Below are positions 5,382 to 59,289 of a stretch of DNA of 64,000 nt, one piece after another. The translations under genes and the position numbers were made by a program. The notes under the pieces were generated by a model that saw only the letters and a program-made list of their open reading frames with translations, ran no database searches and had not been told where the DNA came from. The stretch is taken from NCBI GenBank assembly GCA_002269645.1, contig NIVC01002256.1:62001-126000 (forward strand). Reading direction: 5' to 3'. The number at the start of each line of letters is the position of its first letter. Within the stretch, counting starts at the first letter, position 1. This stretch comes from Macrostomum lignano. Its lineage: Eukaryota.

Positions 5382-5408
5382 TCCCAGTCGCTTCCAATAT
5401 CTGTAGAT

Positions 5409-5558: not shown

Positions 5559-5564
5559 GATAGG

Positions 5565-6560: not shown

Positions 6561-6586
6561 AACTAATTAGCGTTACCTTACTACAG

Positions 6587-8388
<1,802 letters not shown>

Positions 8389-9720: not shown

Positions 9721-10929
9721 GTAATGAATACTTATCTCACCCATTTATTTTCCTCTCCAGTTTCGTATTTTGCTGCTAAAATTTTTGGTTTCTTTGAACA
9801 AAAAAGTTTTTATTATAAATAATAAATTTAGATAACAATTCACTACTTTTTCTACTTGTGCGAGTAGAAAGTTGCGCAAATTGATGGCCTTTTCAGCTGA
9901 TATAACCGATTATATTATACGATTGCATTTTTGTACGCCTGCAATGCTCAGTTGAACCACCGCTCGCCCCAAGGACCCCTGCAGAGGAGAGTAAATTGAA
10001 GCCTAGTCAAGCTTATGTCTGCTGCTTTTTCCAGGATTTTTATCGTTGCTTCGAAATACGCGCTTTTTGCTTCATTTTTTCCCCTGGACTCAATTGCTGC
10101 TCCCGTCTGGCAGTTTAAATAGAATAAATAGCCTGCTCAGCTTAAACTTATTACTCTCATTGTTAATTCTTCTGATTGTGCTCTATTTTTTCCTTTTGTA
10201 ATAGTATATATTTTAAATGCGTAAGGTGTGCTTTTTACTCCAGTAATTGTGTTTTGCGTGTTGTTAGTCAATATCTATATATTTAACTATTGTACACAAT
10301 TATATTAATATTGAGTATAACTTTACTTGCGTTTAATATACATGTGTGTTTCTTAAACATTTTATTTTATTCTATAATATCTATAGTCGGATACTTGGGA
10401 GTTTTACTCTGCCTCAAGACTTGTGCCTGGCCTGTGTACATTATCTCTGAGCCACTTATGGCATACGAAATACCTGCTATGCGCAAAACACAGTTTTGTA
10501 ATGTTTCCTAGAACTGCGCTTGCTGCTGCTGTTGTTGCTATTCGACCATATAGTAAATGTTTCGTTTTAATTTATTCACGTTTTAAAAAGTTATGCTCAT
10601 TTGTTACATTAGTATTATTGTTTATAATAAGTTACCTGCGGTTCTGCTCGCTCTGACTGCTCTAAGTGGAATAGAATATAATCGCTTTTAAACTTTATTA
10701 ATGTTTGATAAGATTTTATGGCCTTCATTATTGACGCTCGACGTCTCCAGCTGGTGGGATTGAAATTCTTTAAGTTTTTTATGACGCTTGAACTTTTTTC
10801 TGTACTTTATTTGCATGTTATTGGTCTTTTTTGTTACTCCTGTTTTTTATTATTCAAGAAATCGAGTAGAATATCATCCGCTTTCAATTCAATACGAATA
10901 AGGTTTATCTACACACACGCGTGGACCAA

Positions 10930-11775
10930 CCCCATGACGGCTTTTCTCACCCTAATATACACCTGGCCTGACCAGCCCACGAGAGCCTCTCTACCCCCAA
11001 TGTACACTCGGTCTGACCAGCCCATGAGAGCCTCTCTCCTCCCAATGTACACTCGGTCTACCAGCCCACGAGAGCCTCTCTCCTCCCAATGTACACTCGG
11101 CCTGACCAGCCCACAAGAGCCTCTCACCCCAATGTACACTCGGCCTGACCAGCCCACGAGAGCGTCTCTCCCCCAATGTACACTCGGTCTACCAGCCCAC
11201 GAAAGCCTCTCTCCCCCCAATGTACACTCGGCCTGACCAGCCCACAAGAGCCTCTCCCCCCAATGTACACTCGGCCTGACCAGCCCACGAGAGCCTCTCT
11301 CCCCCCAATGTACACTCGGTCTACCAGCCCACGAAAGCCTCTCCCCCCAATGTACACTCGGCCTGACCAGCCCCAAACGAGAGCCTCTCCCCCAATGTAC
11401 ACTCGGCCTGACCAGCCCCAAACGAGAGCCTCTCCCCCAATGTACACTCGGCCTGACCAGCCCCAAACGAGAGCCTCTCCCCCAATGTACACTCGGCCTG
11501 ACCAGCCCCAAACGAGAGCCTCTCCCCCAATGTACACTCGGCCTGACCAGCCCCAAACGAGAGCCTCTCCCCCAATGTACACTCGGCCTGACCAGCCCAC
11601 GAGAGCCTCTCTCCCCCCAATGTACACTCGGTCTACCAGCCCACGAAAGCCTCTCCCCCCAATGTACACTCGGCCTGACCAGCCCCAAACGAGAGCCTCT
11701 CCCCCAATGTACACTCGGCCTGACCAGCCCCAAACGAGAGCCTCTCCCCCAATGTGCACTCGGCCTGACCAGTCA
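10930..11775. repeat. Minisatellite, 43-45-bp unit
   Basis: cccaatgtacactcggcctgaccagcccc... repeated. Confidence 0.9.
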
Positions 11776-12124
11776 CTTGAAGGTTTTTCTACTTCGATCT
11801 CTACCTCTCCTTGATCTCTTCTTACTCAAGCTTGTATCTCTCCCTGCTTCCTGGATTTTCTCCATTTCGGTTTGAATGTCTAGCTATTTCTAAGTCTGGA
11901 ATTTTTCTGCTATTTTGACAAGCCAACTATTTGATGCCTATATTTACTTATGCCTGCATGCATATGCATATGTTTATATAACATAATATCTATATTTAAA
12001 TTTATATGTGCAATAGAGTCTGCGCACTCTTCAATAAAAACAATATTGCAGTGCAGTGCTGCGTTTTTCTCAGCAATATTTAACAATTGCTCCTTCATCA
12101 TTGAACTTTTTCTGTGCTTTGTAG

Positions 12125-12834: not shown

Positions 12835-15587
12835 ATGTCCTCACTTACTGTACACGTCAAATGGCAGAAGCAGAAATTCTCCGATGTCCCCGTGGACACC
12901 AGCCAACCACCAGAGCTGTTCAAAGCCACTCTGTACAGCCTCTCTGGTGTGCCTCCGGACCGGCAGAAGGTGAGGCTTTGACTTGGTGGGTATCCGTTAG
13001 GGTGTCTTGAGTCTCCGGAATCGCGGATTGTCCCTTTTCCTAAGACGGTTGTCCACTCTGCTTTGAATTGGGGTGTCCAAAAATCCTCCGATGGGATGTG
13101 ATGTTCACTATGTTCTAAACAATCTAAAACCGAAGTGTCCACAATCTATCTAGGGTGTCCGCAATCCTAATCTAGGATGTCCACAATCCTAATCTAGGAT
13201 GTCCACAATCCATCTAGGGTGTCCGCAATCCTAATCTAGGATGTCCGCAATCCTAATCTAGGATGTCCACAATCCATCTAGGGTGTCCGCAATCCTAATC
13301 TAGGATGTCCGCAATCCTAATCTAGGATGTCCACAATCCATCTAGGGTGTCCGCAATCCTAATCTAGGATGTCCACAATCCTAATCTAGGATGTCCACAA
13401 TCTAGGGTGTCCGCAATCCTAATCTGGGATGTCCGCAATCCTAATCTAGGATGTCCACAATCTTAATCTGGGGTGTCCGCAATCCTAATCTGGGATGTCC
13501 ACAATCCTAATCTGGGGTGTCCACAATCCTAATCTGGGATGTCCACAATCCTAATCTGGGGTGTCCACAATCTTGATCTAGGGTGTCCACAATCTTAATC
13601 TGGGATGTCCACAATCCTAATCTAGGGTGTCCACAATCCTAATCTGGGGTGTCCGCAATCCTAATCTAGGGTGTCCACAATCCTAATCTGGGATGTCCGC
13701 AATCCTAATCTAGGGTGTCCGCAATCCTAATCTAGGGTGTCCACAATCCTAATCTAGGGTGTCCACAATCCTAATCTGGATGACTCAAACTCAAACTCTA
13801 CCTCTAACTCCAGGTAATGGTGAAGGGCACCGTGCTGCCAGACGACAGCTGGTCGGGCATCGCCCTGAAGCCCGGCGCCACGGTTATGCTGCTTGGGTCG
13901 GCCGAGGCTCTGCCGGAGGCTCCGGCCACGCCGCCTGTAAAATTTGTTGAAGACATGGACGAAAGCGAACTGGCCAAGGCGATAGACTTGCCGCCGGGTT
14001 TGAACAATTTGGGCAATACCTGCTATATGAATGCCACATTGCAGTGCCTGCGCAGCGTGCCAGAGCTCAGGTCCATACTGTCCAAGAATCGGCTGGCTGG
14101 CCTGGGCGGTGCGGCAGCTTCAGGCGGAGGTCCCGAGGTGCTGGTATCGGCCATGTCTAATCTGTTTGCCGCGCTGGAAAAATCTGGCAACACCGTGTCG
14201 CCGCACGTATTTTTGCACCTGATGCACGCCGCGTTTCCGCAGTTTGCTACCAAAGCTGAAGGCGGTGTGTTTCAGCAGCAGGATGCCAACGAGTGCTGGG
14301 TGGAGCTGGTGCGCTGTCTGCAGAGCCGGCTGCCCGTGAGTTATGAACTGGGGGGGGGGGGGCAAATTCATTTAGGGCTTGTGTGCACGAACATTTGCCG
14401 TTGGATGTTGTGTGAGATTCACAGCCATCAGAGCCAACCTCACATCGGGGGTCAGGGGGGACAAACTTTGATCGGGGGTCAGAGGGGGACAAACCTTGAT
14501 TGGGGGTCAGAGGGGGACAAACCTTGATCGGGGGTCAGGGGGACAAACCTTGATCGGGGGTCAGAGGGGGACAAACCTTGATCGGGGGTCAGGGGGGACA
14601 AACCTTGATCGGGGGTCAGAGGGGGGCAAACCTTGATCGGGGTCAGGGGGGACAAACCTTGGTCGGGGGTCAGGGGGGGACAAACCTTGATTGGGGGTCA
14701 GAGGGGGACAAACCTTGATCGGGGGTCAGGGGGACAAACCTTGATCGGGGGTCAGAGGGGGACAAACCTTGATTGGGGGTCAGAGGGGGACAAACCTTGA
14801 TCGGGGGTCAGAGGGGGACAAACCTTGATCGGGGTCAGGGGGGGGACAAACCTTGATCGGGGGTCAGAGGGGGACAAACCTTGATTGGGGGTCAGGGGGG
14901 ACAAACCTTGATCGGGGGTCAGAGGGGGGCAAACCTTGATCGGGGGTCAGGGGGACAAACCTTGATTGGGGTCAGAGAGGGGGTAAACCTTGATAGGGTA
15001 TCAGACGTCACAACCGGAAGTGAGGTTAATTACCCAAATTTTGGTGGCAGATTGGTATTTTAACAAAACTGTAACTTCCTAACCTGGCCAAGACAACCGA
15101 GGCCGGCGGTTCAACGGACGTCTCCTTCACTGACCGCTACCTGACCGGCTCCATGACCTGCCGGCTGACCTGCCAGGAGTGCGGCCCGAAGCCGAGCCGG
15201 AGGTCAATTTGGTTGAGACGTTCAGCCAGTTGAGCTGCTTCATCGACAAGGACGTCAAGTACTTGCACACGGGGCTGACTAACGCTATGAAGAGCTCGCT
15301 GACTAAGCGCTGCGACCGGCTTGGCAGGGACGCCGTGTACTCCAAGCAGAGCAAGATTACCCGCCTGCCGGCTTATCTGACTGTCCAGTTTGTCCGCTTC
15401 TACTATAAGGAGAAGGAGCAGGTCAACGCCAAGGTGCTCAAGGATGTGAAATTCTCCCTGACGCTTGACGTCTATCAGCTGTGCTCCGAGGAGCTGCAGG
15501 CCCGGCTGAAGCCTGTGCGGGAGCAGGTGAGGCTGACTGGCGGATAAGCGGGCAGACAGCAGACACTAAGACTCTAGATAGACACCA

Positions 15588-15665
<78 letters not shown>

Positions 15666-15810
15666 CAGACAGACAGACACCAAGACAGACACCAAGACAG
15701 ACAGACACCAAGACAGACACCAAGACAGACACCAAGACAGACACCAAGACAGACACCAAGACAGACAGACACCAAGACAGACACCAAGACAGACACCAAG
15801 ACAGACACCA

Positions 15811-15867
<57 letters not shown>

Positions 15868-15894
15868 CCAAGACAGACACCAAGACAGACACCA

Positions 15895-15927
<33 letters not shown>

Positions 15928-15942
15928 CCAAGACAGACACCA

Positions 15943-15989
<47 letters not shown>

Positions 15990-18287
15990 GACAGACAGAC
16001 ACTAAGACAGACAGACGGACAGACACTAAGACAGACAGACAGACAGACAGATAAGTGAGTGACGTTCCCCCCCCCCCAAAACCCTCGCAGCTCCGCCGCA
16101 TGGACGAATGGCTCGCCCTGCAGTCCGGAGCCGCCAAGCGACGTCCCGGCGGTCCGGCCGTGGCTCAAGGCGCGGAGCAGGCCGCCACCGCCGACACGGG
16201 CACCAACAACGCTTCGTGGCCTCCGTCGCTGCCGCCGCTGGACCCGGGAGCGCCGCCGCCGCCGGCCTACTACTTCGAGGACGATCCGGGCTCGAACGCT
16301 AGCGGACAGTACATGCTGCAGGCGGTGCTCACGCATCAGGTGCGCTTCGTTGGCTTTTCATGTATAATCAGCTGGCTTTGCTTAGCTTAGGACTAGCCTA
16401 ATTCCATTTATTAGCCAACCCATACCCACTCCGTAGCCAACCTAATCCTCCATCTTAGGGTAGACAACCTAATCCTTTATCTTAGGGTAGACAATCTAAA
16501 TCCTCCATCTTAGGGTAGACAATCTAAACCCTCCATCTTAGGGTAGACAATCTAAATCCTGCATCTTAGGGTAGACAATCTAAATCCTCCATCTTAGGGT
16601 AGACAATCTAAATCCTCCATCTTAGGGTAGACAATCTAAATCCTCCATCTTAGGGTAGACAATCTAAATCCTCCATCTTAGGGTAGACAATCTAAATCCT
16701 CCATCTTAGGGTAGACAATCTAAATCCTCCTTCTTAGGGTAGACAATCTAAATCCTCCATTTTAGGGTAGAAAATCTAAATCCTGCATCTTAGGGTAGAC
16801 AATCTAAATCCTCCATCTTAGGGTAGACAATCTAAATCCTCCATCTTAGGGTAGACAATCTAAATCCTCCATTTTAGGGTAGACAATCTAAATCCTCCAT
16901 CTTAGGGTAGACAATCTAAATCCTCCATCTTAGGGTAGACAATCTAAATCCTCCATTTTAGGGTAGACAATCTAAATCCTCCATCTTAGGGTAGACAATC
17001 TAAATCCTCCATCTTAGGGTAGACAATCTAAATCCTCCATCTTAGGGTAGACAATCTAAATCCTCCATCTTAGGGTAGACAATCTAAATCCTCCATCTTA
17101 GGGTAGACAATCTAAATCCTCCATCTTAGGGTAGACAATCTAAATCCTCCTTCTTAGGGTAGACAATCTAAATCCTCCGTCTTAGGGTAGACAATCTAAA
17201 TCCTCCATCTTAGGGTAGACAATCTAAATCCTCCTTCTTAGGGTAGACAATCTAAATCCTCCATTTTAGGGTAGAAAATCTAAATCCTGCATCTTAGGGT
17301 AGACAATCTAAATCCTCCATCTTAGGGTAGACAATCTAAATCCTCCATCTTAGGGTAGACAATCTAAATCCTCCATTTTAGGGTAGACAATCTAAATCCT
17401 CCATCTTAGGGTAGACAATCTAAATCCTCCATCTTAGGGTAGACAATCTAAATCCTCCATTTTAGGGTAGACAATCTAAATCCTGCATCTTAGGGTAGAC
17501 AATCTAAATCCTCCATCTTAGGGTAGACAATCTAAATCCTCCATCTTAGGGTAGACAATCTAAATCCTGCATCTTAGGGTAGACAATCTAAATCCTCCAT
17601 CTTAGGGTAGACAATCTAAATCCTCCATCTTAGGGTAGACAATCTAAATCCTCCATTTTAGGGTAGACAATCTAAATCCTCCATCTTAGGGTAGACAATC
17701 TAAATCCTCCATCTTAGGGTAGACAATCTAAATCCTCCATTTTAGGGTAGACAATCTAAATCCTCCATCTTAGGGTAGACAATCTAAATCCTCCATCTTA
17801 GGGTAGACAATCTAAATCCTCCATCTTAGGGTAGACAATCTAAATCCTCCATCTTAGGGTAGACAATCTAAATCCTCCATCTTAGGGTAGACAATCTAAA
17901 CCCTCCATCTTAGGGTAGACAATCTAAATCCTCCATCTTAGGGTAGACAATCTAAATCCTCCATCTTAGGGTAGACAATCTAAATCCTCGCATTTCCAAT
18001 CCATCCCTCAGGGCCGGTCGAGCTCCTCCGGTCACTACTTGGCCTGGGTGCGCAAAGCGGACCAGCCCGCCAACGCCAATCTCGAGGAGGATGTCTGGTT
18101 CAAATTCGACGACGACTACGTCTCCCCAGTTACTGGGGCCGACATCCTGCGCCTGAGTGGCGGCGGCGACTGGCACTGCGCCTACCTGCTGTTGTACGGA
18201 CCGCGGCAGCTTGACCGGGATTATTCCAGCCTGCCGCCTCCCACCGATGCCTCTGCTAGCCAGGGTGGCGCGGCCGGCACCAATTGA
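12835..18287 (+). CDS. USP14: Ubiquitin carboxyl-terminal hydrolase 14 (Ubp6); exons 12835-12969, 13814-14335, about 15093-15526, 16091-16339, 18012-18287; one apparent 1-bp deletion near 15185
   Basis: N-terminal UBL (VHVKWQKQKF...PPDRQKVMVKG), Cys box GLNNLGNTCYMNATLQCL, QQDANECW, His box LQAVLTHQGRSSSSGHYLAWV, and WFKFDDDYVS...GGGDWHCAYLLLY. Canonical splice sites. Confidence 0.95.
13140..13780. repeat. USP14 intron 1 minisatellite, 22-bp unit
   Basis: tagggtgtccacaatcctaatc repeated. Confidence 0.9.
14440..15000. repeat. USP14 intron 2 G-rich minisatellite, 26-28-bp unit
   Basis: gggggtcagagggggacaaaccttgatc repeated. Confidence 0.9.
15550..16053. repeat. USP14 intron 3 compound (CAGA)n / caccaagacaga repeat
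   Basis: Visible in sequence. Confidence 0.9.
16440..17990. repeat. USP14 intron 4 minisatellite, 28-bp unit, about 55 copies
   Basis: tagggtagacaatctaaatcctccatct repeated head-to-tail with no spacers. Confidence 0.95.
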
Positions 18288-19344: not shown

Positions 19345-20385
19345 TATAACTGAATTTGACCCGCCACCCCTCTCCTCCAGTCCCCAACTGAACCGCCACC
19401 CCTCCCCCAGTCCTTATCTGAACCGCCACCCCTCCCCCAGTCCTTATCTGAACCACCACCCCTCCCCCAGTCCTTATCTGAACCGCCACCCCTTTCCAGT
19501 CCCCAACTGAACCACCACCCCTCCCCCAGTCCTTATCTGAACCGCCACCCCTCCCCCAGTCCTTATCTGAACCGCCACCCCTCCCCCAGTCCTTATCTGA
19601 ACCGCCACCCCTCCCCCAGTCCTTATCTGAACCGCCACTCCTCTCCCAGTCCTTATCTGAACCGCCACCCCTTTCCAGTCCCCAACTGAACCACCACCCC
19701 TCCCCCAGTCCTTATCTGAACCGCCACCCCTCCCCCAGTCCTTATCTGAACCGCCACCCCTCCCCCAGTCCTTATCTGAACCGCCACCCCTCCCCCAGTC
19801 CTTATCTGAACCGCCACCCCTCCCCCAGTCCTTATCTGAACCGCCACCCCTCCCCCAGTCCTTATCTGAACCACCACCCCTCCTCCCAGTCCTTATCTGA
19901 ACCGCCACCCCTCCCAGTCCTTATCTGAACCGCCACCCCTTTCCAGTCCCCAACTGAACCACCACCCCTCCCCCAGTCCTTATCTGAACCGCCACCCCCC
20001 CCCAGTTCTTATCTGAACCGCCACCCCTCCCCCAGTCCTTATCTGAACCGCCACCCCTCCCAGTCCTTATCTGAACCGCCACCCCTCTCCAGTCCCCAAC
20101 TGAACCGCCACCCCTCCCCCAGTCCTTATCTGAACCGCCACCCCTCCCCCAGTCCTTATCTGAACCGCCACCCCTTTCCAGTCCCCAACTGAACCGCCAC
20201 CCCTCCCCCAGTCCTTTCCTGAACCGCCACCCCTCCCCCAGTCCTTATCTGAACCGCCACCCCTTCCCCAGTCCTTATCTGAACCGCCACCCCTTCCCCA
20301 GTCCTTATCTGAACCGCCACCCCTCCCCCAGTCCTTATCTGAACCGCCACCCCTCCCTCAGTCCTTATCTGAACCGCCACTCCAA
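19345..20385. repeat. C-rich minisatellite, about 30-bp unit
   Basis: ctgaaccgccacccctcccccagtccttat repeated. Confidence 0.9.
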
Positions 20386-20432
20386 ATGAGCCGTTCATGC
20401 GCTGTCAACCGCATGCATGCTCTCAGCCAGCC

Positions 20433-20738
20433 ATGGCGCAAAAGCCGGAGCCGTTCTACAACTTCAGCCGCCAGCCGCAGCCCTATTACGATATTAAGCT
20501 GCCTCAGCCGAAGGCGGTCTCACCTTTGATCCGAGCCGCCCGCTGGGGCTTTTTATTGACCGGCATAATTTACGGCTACACCAGGTTCAATTATCTGGTG
20601 CGCAAGGAGGAGCGCGAGTGGCCGCAGACCCGGGCCATTCTGGAGCGGCGTAAGCACGAGTACGAGGCCAGTCAGAAGATGCGCGGCGAAGTTGAGATGC
20701 TCGAACTGGCTAAGGAGGCCGGCGTGAAGCCCAAGTGA
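20433..20738 (+). CDS. ATP5ME: Mitochondrial ATP synthase subunit e, 101 aa
   Basis: VSPLIRAARWGFLLTGIIYGYTRFNYL matches the subunit e signature (VSPLI...R...L..G..YG), followed by a charged helical tail. Acceptor ctctcag lies 6 nt before the ATG. Confidence 0.85.
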   Translation: MAQKPEPFYNFSRQPQPYYDIKLPQPKAVSPLIRAARWGFLLTGIIYGYTRFNYLVRKEEREWPQTRAILERRKHEYEASQKMRGEVEMLELAKEAGVKPK

Positions 20739-21645: not shown

Positions 21646-22431
21646 TACTCAGCCAACAGTCTGCCACCCCTCCCGCAGTCTAATGGTAAGCAGAATTCGC
21701 AGCAGCTCAGTCGCCAACGCGTCGCCACCGCCGCTGCCGCCACCCAGACTGACGTAGGCACTGTTGATGACCTTCGGCACCTTGAAGAGCTGGCGGAGCT
21801 GCGGCTTCGCCTGTCAGTGGCCACCGATCAGCTGATCCGCCTGCGCTCCGCCTACTGCGCCTTCCCCGGCAGGGAGGACGCTCTCGATCGGTGGTCGCGC
21901 AGCGTCTTTCTCGGCATCTTCCACGACGATGACGAGGACTTGTCTTCATCGTCTGACACTGACTCTGACGGCAGTGGTGCCGAAAGCGGCGGCAGCAGTT
22001 CGGCAGACGCCGACGGCGAGCTGTTCAAGCCGAGGCGCCTTCGACGAGTTTCAGTCTCGTCGGCGTCTCGATCTCGGTCTAGGACCAACTCGTCGACTTA
22101 TTTAGCTACAAATATCAGAACAAAGACCAGTCATAGGAGTAGCAGTCTTTGCAACAGACGCCAAAACTCTTTAGCGTCGTTAATAACGAAATTAACCGCG
22201 CCGCTGGTATGGATTTTATCGGCATTGGTGCTTTGGCCCGCTGGGGTAGCTTGGCGACGTTGTCGACGATTAACAGCGGCGGCGACAGCGACAAGGATAA
22301 GGAGGCCGAACGCTCTGATTGGCTGGCGGCCCCGGCCTCTCTGCTGCCTGCTGGCCTTGCTGATTGGCTACGCCGTCTGCCTGCACCTCGTGTTGGCCCA
22401 CTGTCTACTGGGCTTCCTGGCCGATTATTAA
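21646..22431 (+). CDS. Probable terminal exon of an unidentified membrane protein (coiled coil, acidic/Ser patch, two C-terminal hydrophobic segments)
   Basis: Frame open for 786 nt from acceptor ctcattctag at 21645; GC-rich codon usage like neighbouring exons; no Met in frame. Confidence 0.5.
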   Translation, partial: YSANSLPPLPQSNGKQNSQQLSRQRVATAAAATQTDVGTVDDLRHLEELAELRLRLSVATDQLIRLRSAYCAFPGREDALDRWSRSVFLGIFHDDDEDLSSSSDTDSDGSGAESGGSSSADADGELFKPRRLRRVSVSSASRSRSRTNSSTYLATNIRTKTSHRSSSLCNRRQNSLASLITKLTAPLVWILSALVLWPAGVAWRRCRRLTAAATATRIRRPNALIGWRPRPLCCLLALLIGYAVCLHLVLAHCLLGFLADY

Positions 22432-23924: not shown

Positions 23925-24919
23925 CGAGGGGTGTCCAAAAAGTAGTGATACTTTTAACCGTAGCTCTCGTTCTGTAGCTTCCTGTGATTTAAAATTTTAT
24001 GAACTGATAGCGGAAAATCTCTTCTACAGACTGCTTTTTGAATTTTTAAAATTGATACTAGAGAACAAAAGTTATACCCACGAAAGTAACAGTACCTGTA
24101 CCATAGAGTTACACAAATTATATCGAAATTTATAATAGTTGACTTCTGCACTCATTCATTAAGAAGGCATCGATAAATGTCTTGTTTAAGCAATACCAAA
24201 CCCCAATTGCAAAATGATGCTCACTGTGACTGACTGAAATTTATCTATGGACGGGATCAGGCGCAGAAAAAATAAAGCATTAAATGCATTACTTTACTTG
24301 CAAACAGAGGATCGCTTGCATTTTGCGATTCGTTCATGATTTCATTGCCCATACTCGACAACACACATGAATGTGCACTCAGTTGTTGCTCAGCAAAGTA
24401 CTATCTTCACTCTTTGGGGCGCTGGCCATGGTGCCTCAGAAATTCACGCAAAACTTTGCTCTGCGCACGGATCCTCTGCGGTCAGCAAAATGACAGTTTA
24501 TCGATGGATGGAGCAGTTCAGCGAGGGAAGAATTGACTTGGCAGATCAGCATTGGACGGGGCGGCCATACGTTCATCGACCTGATGTACTGGCGGACTCC
24601 ATTCTGAATCTTCTTGACGAGGACTCCCGAATGACCATTAGAGAGATCGCTGACAGGTTGGACAAGCCGAAATCAACAATTCATCGAAGCTTACTCGGCA
24701 TGGATCTCGTGAAGCTCAGCCTATAATTTGTGTAACTCTATGGTACAGGTACTGTTACTTTTGTGGGTATAACTTTTGTTCTCTGGTATCAATTTTAAAA
24801 ATTCAAAAAGCAGTCTGTAGAAGAGATTTTCCGCTATCAGTTCATAAAATTTTAAATCACAGGAAGCTACAGAACGAGAGCTACGGTTAAAAGTATCACT
24901 ACTTTTTGGACACCCCTCG
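23925..24919 (+). mobile_element. Non-autonomous mariner derivative with 198-bp terminal inverted repeats, flanked by TA
   Basis: TA|CGAGGGGTGTCCAAAAAG... at 23925-24122 is the reverse complement of 24722-24919 (2 mismatches). Confidence 0.92.
24367..24726 (+). CDS. Truncated mariner transposase (both HTH DNA-binding subdomains, no DDD catalytic domain), 119 aa
   Basis: GASEIHAKLCSAHGSSAVSKMTVYRWMEQFSEG...TGRP...DSRMTIREIADRLDKPKSTIHRSL; ends before the WVPHEL linker, with the stop supplied by the right inverted repeat. Confidence 0.8.
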   Translation: MNVHSVVAQQSTIFTLWGAGHGASEIHAKLCSAHGSSAVSKMTVYRWMEQFSEGRIDLADQHWTGRPYVHRPDVLADSILNLLDEDSRMTIREIADRLDKPKSTIHRSLLGMDLVKLSL

Positions 24920-25130: not shown

Positions 25131-25769
25131 TCAGGTATTCATGTACTTCGCGGCACAGTTGACCGTCACATTGACGAAGCTCTTGACGTAGACTCGATTC
25201 TCGCCGCCATTTTTCGGGCTGCATCTCTGCTGTAGCTTGTACACCTGACGGAAGTAGACTATGTCAACGCATTTTACTGGCTGTTGCCGACCGTTGCTCT
25301 TGTACACGATTGCTTCAGACTGAATGCATTCGGCGTGCACTATTAGCATTGGCACGGTGTCCGGGTAGTGCATCACCCTGTAGCGCACTGGACACACCCG
25401 ACTGCTCAGATCTCTCAGCGGCTTCATTACCGGCATTGCTTCCGGGTACTGATCGTCGGTTTCCGATGTCTTTGCAAGCTCTTGCATCTGTTCAGCCAGG
25501 CTGTTCCACTCTTGAATTCTTAGCTCCTTCGGTAGATAAGTGTCGGCTGTGGAGTTCACGATCTCCTCGATAAGGCAGTCGGTATTGGACCTCTTTGTAA
25601 AACAGTTGCTTACGATTGACCTTGAATTGTTGTCTCGACAAGTGACATCTGCGCTGCTGTTCAGTCGAATAAACGTTCGAGGCTTAGAGCTGCCATCGGC
25701 GAGCACCGAGTAGACTGTTATTGCTGCTAATAGCGAGCAGCAGATCGCGGCCTTCCTCGTGGGCATCAT
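25131..25769 (-). CDS. Secreted IL-17/noggin/trunk-superfamily cystine-knot-like protein, paralog 1 (intronless, 212 aa)
   Basis: Hydrophobic signal peptide; C-terminal RVCPVRYR...YPDTVPMLIVHAEC...KCVDI...RQVY...RC...YVKSFVNVTVNCAA. Confidence 0.7.
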   Translation of the reverse strand: MMPTRKAAICCSLLAAITVYSVLADGSSKPRTFIRLNSSADVTCRDNNSRSIVSNCFTKRSNTDCLIEEIVNSTADTYLPKELRIQEWNSLAEQMQELAKTSETDDQYPEAMPVMKPLRDLSSRVCPVRYRVMHYPDTVPMLIVHAECIQSEAIVYKSNGRQQPVKCVDIVYFRQVYKLQQRCSPKNGGENRVYVKSFVNVTVNCAAKYMNT

Positions 25770-33230: not shown

Positions 33231-33889
33231 TACATGAAGACGCTCCTGAAGCACATGAAGCAGCTACAGGGCTCATGAAATTTTGAGCACTATCGCTATC
33301 ATTCAAGCTTTGCTTTTGCTTTGCTTGCAATGGCGAGGGTCTTTGCTTGTGCCTGCCAATGCATATTTGCCGTACATTAAGCATGCAGGCTCCTCTTCCA
33401 CCACACACAGGCGCTTCCGCATTGCTTTTTTATGAAAAGCATTCAACAATGAGCACTCACTCCTGGGCGAAAACGGGAAAATTGTTTTTTTCTGCAACTT
33501 AACTAAAAAGCAATTGTCAATTCTGTTCAAGAATTGCCCCAGAATTGCCCTGTAGCTGTGTATGCCATCCTGCTACCGGTCCATTCAGTCTCTTTGTTTC
33601 CTTTGTCTTCATCAGAATGAAAGTCTCTCTGTGGGGTTCTATCCATCAACTCATCAATTGCATTGCCTGACATCTTCGTTGCTTATGCAGACAGAAACAT
33701 GATTGAAAACTTCTTACCGGAACAACAGTGGCAGCTGGAATTTTCCATTGTTCCTGAGCCCCCTGCTGCACCAGCACCGGCACACAACGGCAATGCGGAC
33801 CTGGCAGGTGTTTTTAGGAAGCTTCCTGAAAACACTATTTTTTACCCACCGACAAACCTCTGCCGCTGATGTTTGCTGAGATGTGAGAA

Positions 33890-35629
<1,740 letters not shown>

Positions 35630-36434
35630 ATCATCATCTATCTATTTTTGTCATTTCTTATACTGAAAATATTTTTATGAGATAAAATTAAAATATTTGC
35701 TTAGTTACCTGTAGACTACTATGAGTAGAAGATTGTGAACAAGGAATGTCGAAATTCATAAGGCAAGTCATTCTGCCTATTTGTCATCATCCTATTTGTG
35801 CCAGATATCAATTCGTAGCGGTCGTAAACTTTTGATACTAATTTAGTTTTTGTTTATCGCGCTGCAAAACTGTGTGCTTCTAACTTGCTTGCTTCTGCTC
35901 CGGGAGAGGCCACAACAAGCGCAACAAAGTGGGTACAGCTTACAGCACAGCATTACAGACTTGTAGTTTATGCTGTCTCCCAACCAATGCAAATATTAGT
36001 AAACTGCCGATCGAAGTATTAATGCATACAGTGGGAAGAGTTGCATTGGAAATTTCTTGACTTGTCGGGTCCTGAACTGCACTGCCCCTCCGCCTGAATT
36101 CAGCTGGCACTAATCTTGTGGCCGCTTTGGACTGGAGTTGCGGGGGGGACTCTGGCTGGGGGGCTGCTGCGCCTATGCAGTAATGTATAGTATGTAACTT
36201 CTTTACTCTTAAAACGAACTATAGGCATGCATTTCTAGAATTAGAGATCTGGATCGGAAACAGAGCTCTTAATTTGGGTGTAAAATTTAATATTTAAAAG
36301 CGATAGTTCAATCTAATATAATGTATATTTAATAATATAGTGTATGTAACTTGTTTGCGACTTGTCAGCCACAGATCAGCTGGAAAAAGTAGGACTGAAC
36401 CTTTCTGGAGCCTAATCAGATGAAATGGCGCCTG

Positions 36435-40599: not shown

Positions 40600-40862
40600 A
40601 AAATCCATAGGCCACAGCCTAGAGGTCCGGCGCGGCGCTCTGATGTGCCAGCGTCCCAGGCTCGATTCCAAGTGCAGTCACATTAATTTGGGGCTAAATT
40701 GGAATCTCAGCTTGGCTCTGCTCTCGCGCAATTAACGGCCTTGAGGGCCAACCCACAAGGCACAGTGAAGTGTACATGCCTAACGATAAATAAAGTTAGG
40801 GTCACTGTACACTCCTGTGCGAGTGTGTGCCTGCGCGTATGACTGCGTACGTATCCGCGCGC
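40600..40862 (+). mobile_element. tRNA-derived SINE family A, 3'-truncated copy
   Basis: Shares ...ctctgatgtgccagc...ccaggctcgattccaagtgcagtcacattaatttggggct... with 45540 and 63300-63654. Confidence 0.8.
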
Positions 40863-41330: not shown

Positions 41331-41549
41331 GAAATACTAGGAACTGAGAGTTCCTAAGATTCAAGCATAAATTGAAAGATCAAAGGCATTCGTCACTAAT
41401 CGGTATCTACATCGCTAGAAACCTGGGCACGTGCGTTTTCGACGGCGACGTGAACGACTCCTCAGGTGGCTGACGCTGCGGCGGTGGCTGCGACTCCAGC
41501 CAGTTCCGAGACTGCGCCGCCTGGTGCGCCTCGTCTAAACCACTGTGAT

Positions 41550-43806
41550 TCAGAGGCCACCGACCAAATAATGCCTCGCTGGCTGGAGCTCTGAAAGGTG
41601 AGGCGAAGCAACGATGCGTCTTTGTGAAACCAACCAACCAACCAACCAACCAACCAACCAACCAACCAACCAACCAACCAACCAACCAACCAACCAACCA
41701 ACCAACCAACCAACCAACCAACCAACCAACCAACCAACCAACCAACCAACCAACCAACCAACCAACCAACCAACCAACCAACCAACCAACCAACCAACCA
41801 ACCAACCAACCAACCAACCAACCAACCAACCAACCAACCAACCAACCAACCAACCAACCAACCAACCAACCAACCAACCAACCAACCAACCAACCAACCA
41901 ACCAACCAACCAACCAACCAACCAACCAACCAACCAACCAACCAACCAACCAACCAACCAACCAACCAACCAACCAACCAACCAACCAACCAACCAACCA
42001 ACCAACCAACCAACCAACCAACCAACCAACCAACCAACCAACCAACCAACCAACCAACCAACCAACCAACCAACCAATCAACCAAGGAACTAACCAAAAA
42101 ATCGAACACATTAACTAACAAACCTTGCCGAGGCGTGCTGTTGCTCCATCACTGCTGTCAGCATCCGAGGATGCCGAGAGCTCGCTGACTCTCCCAGCTC
42201 CGTCTCCGATGGCACCGCTCGAAGCCGACGCCTTGATCTGCTGATCAGAGACTCAGCGGGGTCGAGGCAGCACTGGACGATCTTGTCGTTGAGTCCGCTG
42301 ACAACCACAATGTCCGCGTCGTCTGCGGAAGTGCCGTGCCAAGTGCAGCCGCTGAGCAGCGATGCCTCCGATGTAGTGAACCGCCCGGAAAGGTGGCGGG
42401 CTCGAGCTGGCATCACCCGGTCAGTCATGGGCAGCAGCTCGGCGCTCAGGCTGGTGAGGGTCTCCATGCTGGGCAGCGTTAGCAGGTCTCGGGAGCCGCC
42501 CAGTCCGTCGCCACCGCTGGGAGACACCTGCGTGATCAGAGAATAGCGGACAGCTTATTATCCGAACCTCAATATTGGAATCCCAGAACCTGTTTCAGAA
42601 TTTAGGAGCTTCAGAATCGGGAATCTTAAAATTAATAATATTAATAATAATAATTGATTTCACCTGCCCTACTGATCAGATGTGCAACCGACTTGACTTA
42701 GCTGCAGGGGGCTCCGTGCGTCCGGAAACAGCGAAGAGACGTTGCATGTGCAACCGACAGCTCAGCCGCTGCTATTGCGCGGTGCATCTGAAGGCTGTGT
42801 ACGGCTGTTCAGTCCAAGGACTGGAGGGAGGGGGGGTCGCCACACGCACCCTCAATTACCCCAGCTTATGCTGGCACCCATTTTACAGAGCCTGGGTGAA
42901 CTGAAGCGATGCAGAGTTAAGTTTCTGTTTTGCCCAAGGACACAAATTGTTCCGAGTGCCGAGTGGGTCGAGAATCGAACCCCCGACTTTTCAGTCGGGG
43001 GTTTTCAGTCGGAAGAACCTAGCTAATGGCCACGGACCAGAGGAGAGAGACAAGGGGAGGGAGGAGAGAAGAGGAAAGAGATGAGAGATGAAAGAAGAGA
43101 GGAAAGTCGAGAGAGGAGATGAGAGATGAAAGAAGAGAGGAAAGTCGAGAGAGGAGATGAGATGAGATATGATATATAAGATATGGGATGAGAGAAGAGA
43201 AGAGAGAGAAGATAAGATGAGAGAGGAGAGGAGAGAAGGGGGCGAGGTAATAGAGAGAATAGGAGAGACAGGTGGTAAGTGAGCTGATAAGAGACGCAAA
43301 CCTTAAGCGGGCCGGATTGCTATTATTAAGTTTCTAAGGTCCCTCCGGCCAGATAGAAAGGTGGCTCGCGGGCCGAAGTTTGCCGACCCGCGCTCTAACC
43401 GCTAGGCTACAGCCCGCTTGAAATTAGGTCAGAATAGGAAGCTCAGAAGCTCAGAGTCTCAAAGCATCACCTGAATGGCCACAGTCCGCCTGTCAAGAGC
43501 CAGCCTAATAAACGGCTGCATCGCTCGTTTCAAGTTGCGCCTCCTCTGCCGTTCCTCTTCCACGCGTACAGTCGGAGTGCTGCGCAGAAAGGCGCTCACC
43601 TCCCGGTCCAGCTCCCGCTTCCCAGCTCGCCGGTTGATGTGCGACACAATCATGAACAGGATGGCCATGGCGTAGACCGTTACCACCGTCACAACGTACC
43701 ACATGGCGCCGTTGTGATCGTAGGGAGTCTCAGCTGGAGCCGTAGTCACCGGCGGGGCACCAGTGCCGTTCGACAGCAGTCCCAACAAGTAAGTTCGGCG
43801 ACCCAT
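41550..43806 (-). CDS. Single-pass membrane protein with KCNE/SMIM34-like transmembrane segment, about 269 aa; exons 43806-43471, 42527-42124, 41619-41550
   Basis: N-terminal NGT sequon, no signal peptide, [27 protein letters not shown], then basic [14 protein letters not shown] junctions with matching phases (0,2). Confidence 0.65.
41628..42085. repeat. (AACC)n intronic microsatellite
   Basis: Pure tetranucleotide run. Confidence 0.95.
42690..43005 (-). mobile_element. tRNA-derived SINE family B with CORE-like central domain
   Basis: Minus strand gggttcgattctcg (B box), then gtgtccttgggcaaa...cttcagttcacccaggctctgtaaaatggg; second copy at 63035-63200. Confidence 0.65.
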
Positions 43807-44244
43807 TGCTGACAGGCCAACTTGTCAGGCTATAGAATTCTCGCGAGCTCGAGGTGAATTGGTTTTAAGAAAGAATGAAGCGGGAGGAGGGAGAGAAAAG
43901 ACAGAGAGTAAAGGCTTACTGAGATGGCCTTTGCATTAACTGCAGCCCCACCTCAACTGTCCTCTAAACTATATAGTCCTTCAGCCTCGCCTAGAACCGC
44001 CATTTGCCTGCTTTGCAGATAGAATGCAAACTAACTATATAGATAATAAACACTGCTATATGGCAAGTTAAGATACACGCAAGTCTGCATAATATTGTAC
44101 CGCTTTGTGGTGCATAGAATAATTAGACAACTACAGACAATAGTTCGTATTTTTAGAGATTCAATGTGATATACGATGCAATTGTAGAGTGTAATTGCTT
44201 CATTTTGGAGTAACTGGTATCTGACTTTAATAGATACGTAGGGC

Positions 44245-44768
44245 CCTGATGTTGGGGCACTGATGTGTTGGGGCACTGATGTATTGGGGCACTGATGTAT
44301 TGGGGCACTGATGTGTTGGGGCACTGATGTATTGGGGCACTGATGTATTGGGGCACTGATGTATTGGGGCACTGATGTATTGGGGCACTGATGTGTTGGG
44401 GCACTGATGTATTGGGGCACTGATGTATTGGGGCACCGATGTATTGGGGCACTGATGTATTGGGGCACTGATGTATTGGGGCACTGATGTATTGGGGCAC
44501 TGATGTATTGGGGCATTGATGTATTGGGGCACTGATGTATTGGGGCACTGATGTATTGGGGCACTGATGTTGGGGCACTGATGTATTGGGGCACTGATGT
44601 ATTGGGGCACTGATGTATTGGGGCACTGATGTATTGGGGCACTGATGTATTGGGGCACTGATGTATTGGGGCACTGATGTATTGGGGCATTGATGTATTG
44701 GGGAATTGATGTATTGGGGCATTGATGTATTGGGGCATTGATGTATTGGGGCACTGATGTATTGGGGC
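44245..44768. repeat. Minisatellite, 16-bp unit
   Basis: actgatgtattggggc repeated about 32 times. Confidence 0.92.
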
Positions 44769-45147: not shown

Positions 45148-47945
45148 ATGCTGGAATTAAATTCCTTTAAGAGTCTTCAGGTTTTATCGGCTGTGGCTCT
45201 GTTGCTGACCAGCTGCTGCAGCGTTGATTCATCAGCCTCTAAGCAGGATGACGCACGAATCTTTCGCCAGATTCGAAGAGACGAAATTCAATGCGAGGCG
45301 AACCTCCAGCTGCCGCGTTGCGAGGGGAACTCAGAAGCTGCTGACTCAGACTGCTACTTGGTTGAGGAGTCGCCGAGGCAGGAGTTCGGTGGCGGCCACG
45401 GCGGTGGCGGCGGCGGCAGGAACATCTTGAAAAGCGGCGAGTGGAACCGGATGAGGCGGGCGATGCAGGTAACTGCATATTGCATATTCCTCCTTTTTTA
45501 GATTATCTAACTTAAACATTTTATATCTTGTACATTCAGGGGGCCGTAGCTCAGTGGTCTGGCGCGGCGTTCTGATATGCCAGCGGCCCAGGCTCGATTC
45601 CAAGTGCAGTCACATTAATTTGGGGCTAAATTGTAACTCGGCTTAGCTCTGCTCGTGCAATGAACGCTCTTCAGCGCCAGCCCCTATTGCACACAGTGAA
45701 GTGTACGTGCCTGACGATAAATAAAGTTTGGGTCGCTGTACACTCTTGTGTGAGAGTGTGCCTGTGCGTATGACTGCGTACGTATCTGCGCGCTTTTGTG
45801 CCTGCTCAGGGGTGTCGGCGGAATAGGCAGTAATGCCTCTCGCCGGTTGTGCGACAATGTCGCTTAAAGTGCGCCAGGGTGCACCTCTAATAACAAAATA
45901 TTATATGTTGTGCATTCCCTAGACTGTAAATTAAGTTAAATATTCGCCTACGTCGTATTGCATGTAGCCTGGACTCACGCATTCAACGTACACTTCACCC
46001 TTATCTTTCTGTCCCACTTAGCTTGGCCCCACGCACTCAACGTACACTTCACCCTTATCTTTCTGTCCCACTTAGCTTTACCCCACGCATTCAACGTACA
46101 CTTCACCCTTATCTTTCTGTCGTACTTAGCTTGGCCCCACGCATTCAACGTACACTTCACCCTTATCTTTCTGTCGTACTTAGCTTGGCCCCACGCATTC
46201 AACGTACACTTCACCCTTATCTTTCTGTCCTACTTAGCTTGGCCCCACGCATTCAATGTACACTTCACCCTTATCTTTCTGTCCTACTTAGCTTGGCCCC
46301 ACGCATTCAACGTTCACTTCACCCTTATCTTTCTGTCCTACTTAGCTTGGCCCCACGCATTCAACGTTCACTTCACCCTTATAATCTTTCTGTCGTACTT
46401 AGCTTGGCCCCACGCATTCAACGTACACTTCACCCTTATCTTTCTGTCGTACTTAGCTTGGCCCCACGCATTCAACGTACACTTCACCCTTATCTTTCTG
46501 TCGTACTTAGCTTGGCCCCACGCATTCAACGTTCACTTCACCCTTATCTTTCTGTCCCACTTAGCTTGGCCCAACGCATTCAATGTACACTTCACCCCTT
46601 ATCTTTCTGTCCCATTTAGCTTGGCCCCACGCATTCAACGTACACTTCACCCTTATAATCTTTCTGTCGTACTTAGCTTGGCCCCACGCATTCAACGTAC
46701 ACTTCACCCTTATCTTTCTGTCCTACTTAGCTTGGCCCCACGCATTCAACGTACACTTCACCCTTATCTTTCTGTCCCACTTAGCTTGGCCCCACGCATT
46801 CAACGTACACTTCACCCTTATCTTTCTGTCGTACTTAGCTTGGCCCCACGCATTCAACGTACACTTCACCCTTATCTTTCTGTCGTACTTAGCTTGGCCC
46901 CACGCATTCAACGTACACTTCACCCTTATCTTTCTGTCCTACTTAGCTTGGCCCCACGCATTCAATGTACACTTCACCCTTATCTTTCTGTCGTACTTAG
47001 CTTGGCCCCACGCATTCAACGTTCACTTCACCCTTATCTTTCTGTCCTACTTAGCTTGGCCCCATGCATTCAACGTACACTTCACCCTTATCTTTCTGTC
47101 CCACTTAGCTTGGCCCCACGCATTCAACGTTCACTTCACCCTTATCTTTCTGTCGTACTTAGCTTGGCCCCACGCATTCAACGTACACTTCACCCTTATC
47201 TTTCTGTCCTACTTAGCTTGGCCCCACGCATTCAATGTACACTTCACCCTTATCTTTCTGTCCTACTTAGCTTGGCCCCACGCATTCAACGTACACTTCA
47301 CCCTTATCTTTCTGTCGTACTTAGCTTGGCCCCACGCATTCAACGTACACTTCACCCTTATCTTTCTGTCCTACTTAGCTTGGCCCCACGCATTCAATGT
47401 ACACTTCACCCTTATCTTTCTGTCGTACTTAGCTTGGCCCCACGCATTCAACGTACACTTCACCCTTATCTTTCTGTCCTACTTAGCTTGGCCCCACGCA
47501 TTCAATGTGTGCGTAAAAAACTCTAATGTACATGTACATCCAGCCCCACTCAGCCGTTTGAAAACTCCTTCCTGACCCGCAGTCAATCGCCAGCGAGTCC
47601 CGCCTATCGGACAGCTATCCATCAGCAATGAGCGACACGGTATTTCAACCGCTGTCGGATCTTCGCGACCGCTACTGCCCAGTCGCCTACAGACTCGACG
47701 CCGACCCCAGTCGATTTCCCGTCCTGATAGTGCAGGCGGACTGTCTCCACGGGCAGGGAGCCCGTTGCCTGGGCCCTCTAGGAGACGCCTGCATCTGCCA
47801 GCCGGTGCTGCACTACAGGCAGATCTACAACCGACTGTCGGACGGTTGCAGATACAACGGCTCCGAGCAGCTCAGAGGCGGCGTATTCGTTAAAGCTTTC
47901 GCAAATGTTAGCGTTAACTGCGCCGCTGTTAAACACGTAGTTTAA
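45148..47945 (+). CDS. Secreted IL-17/noggin/trunk-superfamily cystine-knot-like protein, paralog 2 (227 aa; exons 45148-45468, 47583-47945)
   Basis: Signal peptide; phase-0 intron cag|gtaact ... cccgcag|TCA; C-terminal DRYCPVAYRLDADPSRFPVLIVQADC...CICQPV...C...FVKAFANVSVNCAA with IL-17-like YR.D.DP.RFP. Confidence 0.75.
45540..45890 (+). mobile_element. tRNA-derived SINE family A, near full length, intronic
   Basis: A box tagctcagtggt and B box ggctcgattcc; body shared with the 40600 and 63300 copies. Confidence 0.82.
45955..47507. repeat. Intronic minisatellite, 54-bp unit, about 28 copies
   Basis: gcttggccccacgcattcaacgtacacttcacccttatctttctgtcgtactta repeated. Confidence 0.95.

Positions 47946-50529: not shown

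Positions 50530-59289
<8,760 letters not shown>

What the first reader, a model, noticed from the sequence alone, without database searches (positions are those of the whole stretch)
25131..25769. IL-17/noggin-like cytokine pair with a broken cystine-knot ring (CxC replaced by CAA)
Seen: this ORF and the gene at 45148-47945 align throughout: signal peptide; a 3-Cys pro-region ending DC(L/YL)(I/V)EE; EWN...MQ; D.YP.AM; PL.DL..R.CPV.YR; P.LIV.A(E/D)C; C..(I/V)..RQ(V/I)Y; C; (Y/F)VK.F.NV.VNCAA. Established: knot growth factors use Cys I-IV threading a ring formed by II-V and III-VI, and vertebrate IL-17s lose I-IV. Inference: these proteins keep I-IV and II-V but both lack Cys VI (paralog 1 also lacks III), the mirror-image loss. 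That points to an undescribed secreted ligand subfamily with a distinct Cys-rich pro-domain.
Basis: partly seen in the sequence, partly recalled or inferred. Interest (0 to 1): 0.7.

Follow-up and report, generated by a model that had tools for sequence, protein, structure and literature searches.

The report
Two unannotated flatworm IL-17-like genes
The window, from the flatworm Macrostomum lignano, carries two diverged, unannotated genes for secreted IL-17-family proteins; their "missing" third disulfide is a variant already described in invertebrates (type T1C), so the only new point is that IL-17 ligands occur in a flatworm.

Summary
ORF 25131-25769 (-), 212 aa, and a two-exon gene (45148-45468 + 47583-47945, +), 227 aa, are paralogs: 40% identity over 132 aa, E=2e-25.

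Both pass Pfam's IL17 gathering score (33.7 and 25.0 bits; cut-off 24). No other family appears at E<=10, noggin included. An AlphaFold model of the p1 C-terminal domain (pLDDT 71) matches only IL-17F, IL-25 and IL-17A among its top 50 PDB hits (TM up to 0.69).

Alignments to IL-17F and IL-25 confirm the cysteine reading:
- Cys1/4 and Cys2/5 are present.
- The Cys6 position is Ala in both proteins.
- The canonical Cys3 position is Ala in p1 and Gly in p2.

This pattern is not undescribed. A 2024 PNAS paper (PMC11087794) defines it as IL-17 knot type T1C, common in invertebrates. A cleaved "pro-domain" is not supported, because the dibasic sites are not conserved between the paralogs.

What is new:
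- The window is Macrostomum lignano (GCA_002269645.1, scaffold NIVC01002256.1).
- Neither protein has a detectable relative in protein collections built from about 15 billion sequences.
- No IL-17 survey I could read covers Platyhelminthes.

Verdict: new members of a known kind, of modest interest.

The parts
25131..25769 (-). p1: single-exon CDS of a 212-aa IL-17-like protein (stop codon included)
   Evidence: ORF list and DNA. Pfam IL17 33.7 bits against a cut-off of 24.
25698..25769 (-). p1 predicted signal peptide (aa 1-24, MMPTRKAAICCSLLAAITVYSVLA)
   Evidence: The strongest 12-aa hydropathy window is at aa 8-19, mean KD 2.48. The cleavage site is inferred from small residues at -1/-3; no SignalP run was possible.
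25524..25697 (-). p1 N-terminal extension with three Cys (C44, C56, C65) ending in TDCLIEE. No Pfam family.
   Evidence: It is conserved with p2 C49/C58/C69.
25152..25397 (-). p1 IL-17 domain (aa 125-206). Cys1=C126, Cys2=C148, Cys3 position=A153, Cys4=C167, fifth Cys=C183, N-glycosylation site N200, Cys5=C205. The Cys6 position, A207, is the next codon (25149-25151).
   Evidence: Pfam model positions 2-78 of 81. HMMER alignments to IL-17F and IL-25. AF2 model and Foldseek.
45148..45468 (+). p2 exon 1 (aa 1-107): signal peptide, three-Cys N-terminal region, Gly-rich insert, EWN..MQ
45469..47582 (+). p2 intron (phase 0, GT..AG). It holds a dispersed ~340-bp repeat and a 54-bp x 28.4 minisatellite (45965-47505).
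47583..47945 (+). p2 exon 2 (aa 108-227 plus stop). The IL-17 domain is aa 139-223 (47676-47930). Cys1=C139, Cys2=C161, Cys3 position=G166, extra Cys C169 and C177, Cys4=C179, fifth Cys=C196, N215, Cys5=C220, Cys6 position=A222.
   Evidence: Pfam IL17 25.0 bits for the whole protein and 27.6 bits for the domain alone. Alignments.

Best explanation
p1 and p2 are an old, divergently oriented gene pair about 19 kb apart in the flatworm Macrostomum lignano. They encode secreted, N-glycosylated ligands of the IL-17 family.

Shown:
- Each has a signal peptide and an N-terminal extension of roughly 60-100 aa with three Cys.
- Each has a C-terminal IL-17 domain of four beta-strands.
- The domain keeps the Cys1-Cys4 and Cys2-Cys5 positions but lacks both partners of Cys3-Cys6. 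This is the described 'T1C' knot type.
- p2 has an extra pair of Cys (C169, C177) in the strand 2-3 loop.

Inferred:
- By analogy with IL-17A/F, the fifth conserved Cys (p1 C183, p2 C196) probably bonds to one of the three N-terminal Cys.
- That bond would tie the extension to the core, perhaps across a dimer.
- The dimer would bind an IL-17R-type receptor (double FN3 plus SEFIR).
For: Sequence profile: Pfam IL17 scores above the gathering cut-off for both proteins, over nearly the whole model.

Solved structures: the only meaningful PDB sequence hits are IL-17F and IL-25.

Fold: the AF2 domain model has pLDDT 71. Its top 50 Foldseek PDB matches are all IL-17F, IL-25 or IL-17A, with TM 0.51-0.69 (mostly 0.60-0.69) and probability 1.00.

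Cysteine mapping: CPV-Cys and VKC-Cys fall on the two Ser positions of IL-17F. NC-A-A falls on AC-V-C of IL-25.

T1C definition: PMC11087794.

Signs of function:
- intact ORFs and canonical splice sites;
- a conserved signal peptide and a conserved NV[ST] glycosylation site;
- an even Cys count;
- dN 0.71 against a saturated dS of about 3.

A two-exon structure and local duplicates are typical of invertebrate IL-17 genes.
Against: - p2 is only 1 bit above the Pfam cut-off as a whole protein.
- PDB sequence E-values are weak (0.05-0.35).
- The AF2 model rests on a two-sequence alignment, and its coordinates could not be inspected. No disulfide geometry was measured.
- No relatives were found in any database, so there is no phylogeny and no conservation test beyond the pair.
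- No expression evidence was available.
- Whether M. lignano has an IL-17R, SEFIR or CIKS gene could not be tested here.
Confidence: 0.8

Rival explanations
1. One reading: an undescribed ligand subfamily defined by a new way of breaking the knot (CxC to CAA), with a distinct Cys-rich pro-domain that is cleaved off.
For: The CAA ending and the three-Cys N-terminal region are conserved in both paralogs. The N-terminal parts match no Pfam family. No relatives exist in the databases searched.
Against: Loss of Cys3/6 is already catalogued as IL-17 type T1C and is common in invertebrates. The dibasic sites are not at equivalent positions: p1 has KR59-60 between Cys56 and Cys65; p2 has RQIRR40-44 before Cys49 and RMRR101-104. 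The fifth conserved IL-17 Cys needs an N-terminal partner, which argues that the region is retained.
Confidence: 0.1
2. Same family, different job. Like crustacean CFSH or insect PTTH, these would be IL-17-domain neurohormones or developmental ligands, for example in reproduction or regeneration of this hermaphrodite. They would not be immune cytokines and might use a non-SEFIR receptor.
For: In ecdysozoans, IL-17-domain ligands act mainly as neurohormones (PMC11087794). CFSH type I and type II have 8 and 9-10 Cys plus an IL-17 domain (PMC10604874); p1 and p2 have 8 and 10 Cys after the signal peptide. p1 has a KR site about 35 aa after the signal peptide; by my recollection, not checked here, that resembles the CFSH precursor layout.
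Against: No sequence comparison with CFSH or PTTH was possible. The KR site is not conserved in p2. The matching Cys counts may be coincidence. This reading does not conflict with family membership.
Confidence: 0.25
3. The two genes are decaying or unexpressed relics, which would explain why no annotation includes them.
For: They are absent from every protein collection searched, including the NCBI gene set of the same assembly. No AATAAA signal lies within 400-450 nt downstream of either stop codon. The surroundings are rich in transposons and repeats.
Against: Both reading frames are intact after a divergence large enough to saturate dS. All structural Cys, the signal peptides, the glycosylation site and the splice sites are kept. 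The rough dN/dS is about 0.23.
Confidence: 0.07
4. They belong to another cystine-knot family (noggin, Trunk/PTTH, Spaetzle, NGF), and the IL17 hit is cross-talk.
For: Knot families are distantly related, and Trunk is reported as the closest relative of IL-17 (PMC11087794).
Against: No such family appears in Pfam at E<=10 for the whole proteins or the isolated domains. All top 50 structural matches are IL-17 family chains.
Confidence: 0.02

Closest known systems
Invertebrate IL-17 ligands of knot type T1C (Cys3/6 disulfide lost), as defined in PMC11087794 (PNAS 2024)
   Same: Both have an IL-17 domain with Cys1/4 and Cys2/5 kept and Cys3/6 absent. Both have the CP(W/V) motif with Cys in place of the chordate Ser, a signal peptide, a length of about 200 aa, a two-exon gene (p2) and local duplication.
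   Different: These come from a phylum (Platyhelminthes) absent from the surveys I could read. CPV replaces CPW. They have a three-Cys N-terminal extension. p2 has an extra loop Cys pair. No sequence-level relative was retrievable, so orthology to any published T1C gene is untested.
Human IL-17F, IL-17A and IL-25 (type T2; PDB 1jpy, 6hg9, 7uwk)
   Same: They share the fold (TM up to 0.69) and the Cys2 and Cys5 positions. They share the fifth Cys, which is interchain in IL-17F. They share the DP.R.P...A.C motif.
   Different: Vertebrate ligands have Ser at the Cys1/4 positions and keep Cys3/6. The flatworm proteins do the opposite. Sequence identity is only 14-24% in the structural alignments.
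Crustacean female sex hormone (CFSH), an IL-17-domain neurohormone
   Same: Both are secreted precursors of about 210-230 aa with a C-terminal IL-17 domain. Both have 8 (type I) or 9-10 (type II) Cys, and type I CFSH, like p1 and p2, carries an N-glycosylation motif.
   Different: CFSH is restricted to crustaceans. No direct sequence comparison was done. The conserved glycosylation site here is C-terminal, just before Cys5, not N-terminal. The dibasic site is not conserved between p1 and p2.

Membership tests
IL-17 family (Pfam PF06083) | Profile match above the curated gathering score over most of the domain | tested here: met
   p1 scores 33.7 bits (35.7 for the domain alone) and p2 25.0 (27.6), against a cut-off of 24. 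Model positions 2-78 and 3-80 of 81 are covered.
IL-17 family (Pfam PF06083) | IL-17 fold: two pairs of long beta-strands | tested here: met
   The AF2 domain model has pLDDT 71.1 and is all-beta. The top 50 Foldseek PDB hits are all IL-17F, IL-25 or IL-17A, with TMq 0.51-0.69. The model comes from a two-sequence alignment, so confidence is moderate.
IL-17 family (Pfam PF06083) | Secretory signal peptide | tested here: met
   Both have N-terminal hydrophobic cores, mean KD 2.48 and 2.28 over 12 aa, followed by small residues. No dedicated predictor was available.
IL-17 family (Pfam PF06083) | [quoted passage not shown] | tested here: met
   p1 has CPVRYRVMHYPDTVPMLIVHAECI and p2 has CPVAYRLDADPSRFPVLIVQADCL. 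The third residue is V rather than W; PMC8353272 mentions sporadic variation there.
IL-17 family (Pfam PF06083) | Fifth conserved Cys, interchain in IL-17F | tested here: met
   p1 C183 and p2 C196 align at or next to IL-17F 'HQGC'.
IL-17 family (Pfam PF06083) | Binds an IL-17R (double FN3 plus SEFIR) and signals via CIKS/Act1 | not testable with these tools
No paper pairs SEFIR with planarian or Platyhelminthes.
IL-17 knot type T1C (PMC11087794) | Cys1/4 and Cys2/5 present, Cys3/6 absent | tested here: met
   The Cys1, Cys4, Cys2 and Cys5 positions are occupied by Cys. The Cys3 position is A153 (p1) and G166 (p2). The Cys6 position is A207 (p1) and A222 (p2). Actual bonding was not measured.
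Noggin (PF05806) | Profile match to the noggin family | tested here: not met
   No hit at E<=10 for the whole proteins or for the separated N- and C-terminal parts. No noggin chain appears in the top 50 fold matches.
Trunk / PTTH / Spaetzle / NGF knot ligands | Profile or fold match to one of these families | tested here: not met
   Only IL17 is reported by Pfam at E<=10. The top 50 Foldseek hits are all IL-17 family chains.
CFSH (crustacean female sex hormone) | Signal peptide, precursor-related peptide, dibasic cleavage site and an IL-17-domain mature peptide with 8-10 Cys | tested here: inconclusive
   p1 has KR59-60 and 8 Cys after the signal peptide. p2 has 10 Cys, but its dibasic sites lie elsewhere. 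No CFSH sequence was available for comparison.

The most novel reading that the evidence does not exclude
These are the first IL-17-family ligands recognised in Platyhelminthes. They would show that an early-branching, regenerating, RNAi-tractable flatworm kept the ancestral IL-17 system in its T1C form. That would allow direct tests of IL-17 signalling in flatworm wound response, regeneration or reproduction, and of whether the system was lost in parasitic flatworms.
Probability: 0.45. Interest if true: 0.5.

Novelty: new member of a known kind. Interest (0 to 1): 0.35.

Why it matters
IL-17 is one of the few cytokine families shared by cnidarians and vertebrates. The surveys I could read skip flatworms:
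- PMC4517768 surveys only 10 invertebrate species and mentions flatworms just once, in passing.
- PMC8353272 lists its surveyed phyla in Table 5, and Platyhelminthes is not among them.
- The main texts of PMC11087794 and a 2026 preprint do not mention flatworms. The PNAS figure and supplements were not readable.

Finding two intact IL-17 genes that no annotation or protein database holds adds the phylum to the map. It also gives M. lignano laboratories two candidate ligands to test in a model that supports RNAi, transgenesis and regeneration assays.

It does not change what is known about cystine-knot architecture. The disulfide pattern is the published T1C type.

Tried and rejected
1. Word-indexed homology search with p1 and with the p1+p2 alignment at E<=10: nothing.
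2. Exhaustive HMMER search of 1.84 billion cluster representatives with the p1 + p2-exon-2 alignment (A1) as profile: 0 hits at E<=1e-3.
3. Exact look-up of p1 in public assemblies: not on record.
4. AF2 on full-length p1: pLDDT 43, unusable, so not used for a fold search.
5. phmmer of p1 alone against the PDB: only chance hits such as histone H4 and L1CAM. IL-17 chains appeared only with the two-sequence profile.
6. Supplementary sequences of the PNAS paper: not held. Direct comparison with published T1C genes was therefore impossible.
7. Search for more copies in the window by tblastn: only the two.
8. DNA-level similarity between the two loci: none. The duplication is old, and p1 shows no evidence of being a recent retrocopy.
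9. Pfam scan of ten other non-repetitive ORFs in the window for linked immune or receptor genes: only ATP-synt_E.
10. dN/dS: dS is saturated. LWL85 and YN00 failed, so the NG86 value is only indicative.
11. Noggin, Trunk, PTTH, Spaetzle and NGF: rejected, as set out in the membership test.

Full report
**1. What is in the sequence**

The ORF at 25131-25769 on the minus strand is real. It runs from ATG to TGA, has no intron and encodes 212 aa. I call it p1.

The region 45148-47945 on the plus strand holds a two-exon gene, p2.
- Exon 1 is 45148-45468 and ends ...GCG ATG CAG|GTAACT.
- Exon 2 is 47583-47945 and follows a pyrimidine tract and CAG.
- The intron is phase 0, and the spliced product is 227 aa.

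Across the junction p2 lines up with p1 without a gap (AMQ|SIASESRLSDSYPSAM against QMQ|ELAKTSETDDQYPEAM). This supports the gene model.

blastp gives 40% identity over 132 aa, E=2e-25.

tblastn finds no third copy in the window. The two loci share no DNA-level similarity. They are therefore an old duplicate pair, divergently oriented, with start codons about 19.4 kb apart.

**2. Source organism**

A neighbouring exon (13817-14527) is 99% identical to the USP14-like protein BOX15_Mlig029734g1 of Macrostomum lignano.

The contig that encodes that protein is NCBI GCA_002269645.1, scaffold NIVC01002256.1. Its positions 64835-87233 are 100% identical to window 2835-25233. The window is therefore NIVC01002256.1:62001-126000 of this free-living flatworm.

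**3. Family assignment**

Pfam reports only IL17 (PF06083).
- p1 scores 33.7 bits and p2 25.0 bits, against a gathering cut-off of 24.
- The isolated C-terminal domains score 35.7 and 27.6 bits over model positions 2-78 and 3-80 of 81.
- At E<=10 no noggin, Trunk/PTTH, Spaetzle, NGF, TGF-beta or DAN family appears.
- The N-terminal halves match nothing.

A two-sequence profile searched against all PDB sequences returns IL-17F (E=0.05) and IL-25 (E=0.35) as the only meaningful hits.

AlphaFold2 on full-length p1 failed, with pLDDT 43. On the trimmed domain (p1 aa 117-212) it gave pLDDT 71.1 and pTM 0.51, with an all-beta layout of two long strand pairs.

Foldseek of that model against the PDB gives IL-17F, IL-25 or IL-17A for all top 50 matches. 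TM scores range 0.51-0.69 (mostly 0.60-0.69), probability is 1.00, and the best E-value is 1.4e-3.

The sequences also fit the published invertebrate IL-17 motif 1 and a CPV variant of the CPW motif.

I conclude that both are IL-17-family ligands.

**4. Cysteine map**

The map comes from the HMMER alignments to IL-17F and IL-25 and from the p1/p2 alignment.

| Knot position | p1 | p2 | Aligns with |
|---|---|---|---|
| Cys1 | C126 (CPV) | C139 | Ser of IL-17F 'TSPW' |
| Cys2 | C148 | C161 | 'AQC' of IL-17F |
| Cys3 (Cys2 + 5) | A153 | G166 | second Cys of 'CRNLGC' in IL-17F |
| Cys4 | C167 | C179 | Ser of IL-17F 'MNSVP' |
| Cys5 | C205 | C220 | first Cys of IL-25 'ACVC' |
| Cys6 | A207 | A222 | second Cys of IL-25 'ACVC' |

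The fifth conserved IL-17 Cys (IL-17F 'HQGC') corresponds to p1 C183 and p2 C196. In IL-17F it forms an interchain bond to an N-terminal Cys; that bond is established knowledge, not tested here.

p2 has two further Cys, C169 and C177, in the loop between strands 2 and 3. I infer that they pair with each other.

After the signal peptide p1 has 8 Cys and p2 has 10, both even numbers.

The one correction is that p2's nearby Cys is not at the canonical Cys3 position.

**5. Is the pattern new?**

No. PMC11087794 (PNAS 2024) sorts IL-17 knots into five types:
- T1A has all three disulfides.
- T1B has lost 2/5.
- T1C has lost 3/6.
- T2 has lost 1/4 and is the tunicate and vertebrate type.
- T3 is the cnidarian type and lacks Cys5/6.

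The paper states that T1A/B/C are the prevalent types in all metazoans outside the olfactores. Amphioxus has 1, 3 and 2 genes of types T1A, T1B and T1C.

PMC4517768 and PMC8353272 had already shown that invertebrate IL-17s carry Cys where chordates have Ser. The 'CAA' proteins are T1C-type IL-17s.

**6. The N-terminal region**

The three Cys and the DC(L/YL)(I/V)EE, EWN..MQ, D.YP.AM and PL.DL motifs are conserved between the paralogs. No Pfam family covers them.

The basic sites are not at equivalent positions:
- p1 has KR59-60, between the second and third Cys.
- p2 has RQIRR40-44, before the first Cys, and RMRR101-104.

The fifth Cys needs a partner, and one of the three N-terminal Cys would otherwise be unpaired. 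I therefore think this region is a retained N-terminal extension, disulfide-tied to the core as in IL-17A/F, and not a cleaved pro-domain. This is inference, and N-terminal sequencing would settle it.

**7. Are the genes alive?**

In favour of function:
- Both frames are intact despite divergence that saturates synonymous sites. NG86 gives dN 0.71 and dS about 3.0 over 128 codons; the other methods failed.
- The signal peptides, all structural Cys, an NV[ST] sequon five residues before Cys5, and the splice sites are conserved.

Against:
- I had no expression data.
- No AATAAA signal lies within 400-450 nt downstream of either stop codon.
- The surroundings are repeat-rich.

**8. What is new**

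Neither protein, nor anything similar, is present in the collections searched.
- The 5.8-billion-cluster protein collection gave nothing, even at E<=10.
- The 1.84-billion representative library gave 0 hits at E<=1e-3.
- p1 is not on record as a called gene. The gene list of the same NCBI scaffold shows nothing at the p1 end of locus L001.

On the literature side, PMC8353272 lists its surveyed phyla and Platyhelminthes is not among them. PMC4517768 surveys 10 invertebrate species and mentions flatworms once, in passing. The main texts of PMC11087794 and the 2026 preprint never mention flatworms.

Searches that pair IL-17 or SEFIR with Macrostomum, planarian or Platyhelminthes return nothing relevant.

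So these appear to be unannotated genes, possibly the first IL-17 ligands noted in a flatworm. Two limits apply. The paper library is incomplete. The PNAS figure and supplements, which list the species surveyed, were not readable.

**9. Likely mechanism**

Shown: secretory signal, IL-17 domain and fold, T1C cysteine set, conserved glycosylation sequon.

Inferred from the family:
- The product is a secreted glycoprotein dimer, homo- or p1/p2 heterodimer.
- Two intrachain disulfides per chain (1-4 and 2-5) hold the four strands together.
- The N-terminal extension is linked through the fifth Cys.
- The dimer binds an IL-17R-type receptor and signals through SEFIR/CIKS-TRAF.

Whether the role is immune, wound-related or neuroendocrine is open. 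In ecdysozoans the IL-17-domain ligands CFSH, PTTH and ILC-17.1 are mainly neurohormones.

**10. Verdict**

These are new members of a known kind, from a phylum where the family had not been charted. Interest is modest, at 0.35.

Noticed in passing
window 3192-4415 (-) and 4899-5381 (-): A 407-aa ORF with DUF3504, a weak phage-integrase domain and a QRICH1-like domain, which looks like a Crypton-type tyrosine recombinase or a domesticated relative. A partial duplicate (about 97-98% DNA identity over shared segments) lies 0.5 kb upstream.
   Followed up: partly
window 24367-24726 (+): A remnant ORF with mariner/Mos1-type HTH domains (HTH_48, HTH_32, HTH_23) but no transposase catalytic part. 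It lies about 400 bp beyond the 3' end of p1.
   Followed up: partly
window 45965-47505: A 54-bp minisatellite of 28.4 copies (95% matches) fills most of the p2 intron. It produces long spurious ORFs in several frames.
   Followed up: yes
window 45539-45883, 40610-40862 (+), 63319-63654 (-): A dispersed ~340-bp repeat, with copies about 85% identical, sits in the p2 intron. Its 5' end looks tRNA-like (GGGGCCGTAGCTCAGTGG...), which suggests a tRNA-derived SINE. ARAGORN calls no tRNA anywhere in the window.
   Followed up: partly
window 33873-35685, 41407-42121, 44031-44754, 48409-50201, 50598-51308, 10718-11814, 15481-16336: The density of micro- and minisatellite arrays is very high. They cause strong local GC and AT skews (for example GC 0.27 and GC skew -0.76 at 34-36 kb) and many long artefactual ORFs.
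   Followed up: no
window ~2835-8388 (+), 13817-18284 (+), 20373-20735 (+), 21646-22431 (+): Neighbouring host genes are an SH2-tyrosine kinase, a USP14-like deubiquitinase, ATP synthase subunit e, and an annotated 250-aa protein with no Pfam family. None is obviously linked to IL-17 function.
   Followed up: partly
window 25131-25769 and 45148-47945: Neither IL-17-like gene nor any homolog is present in the public protein collections searched. p1 is not recorded as a called gene in the same assembly, so both appear to be missing from the deposited annotation.
   Followed up: yes
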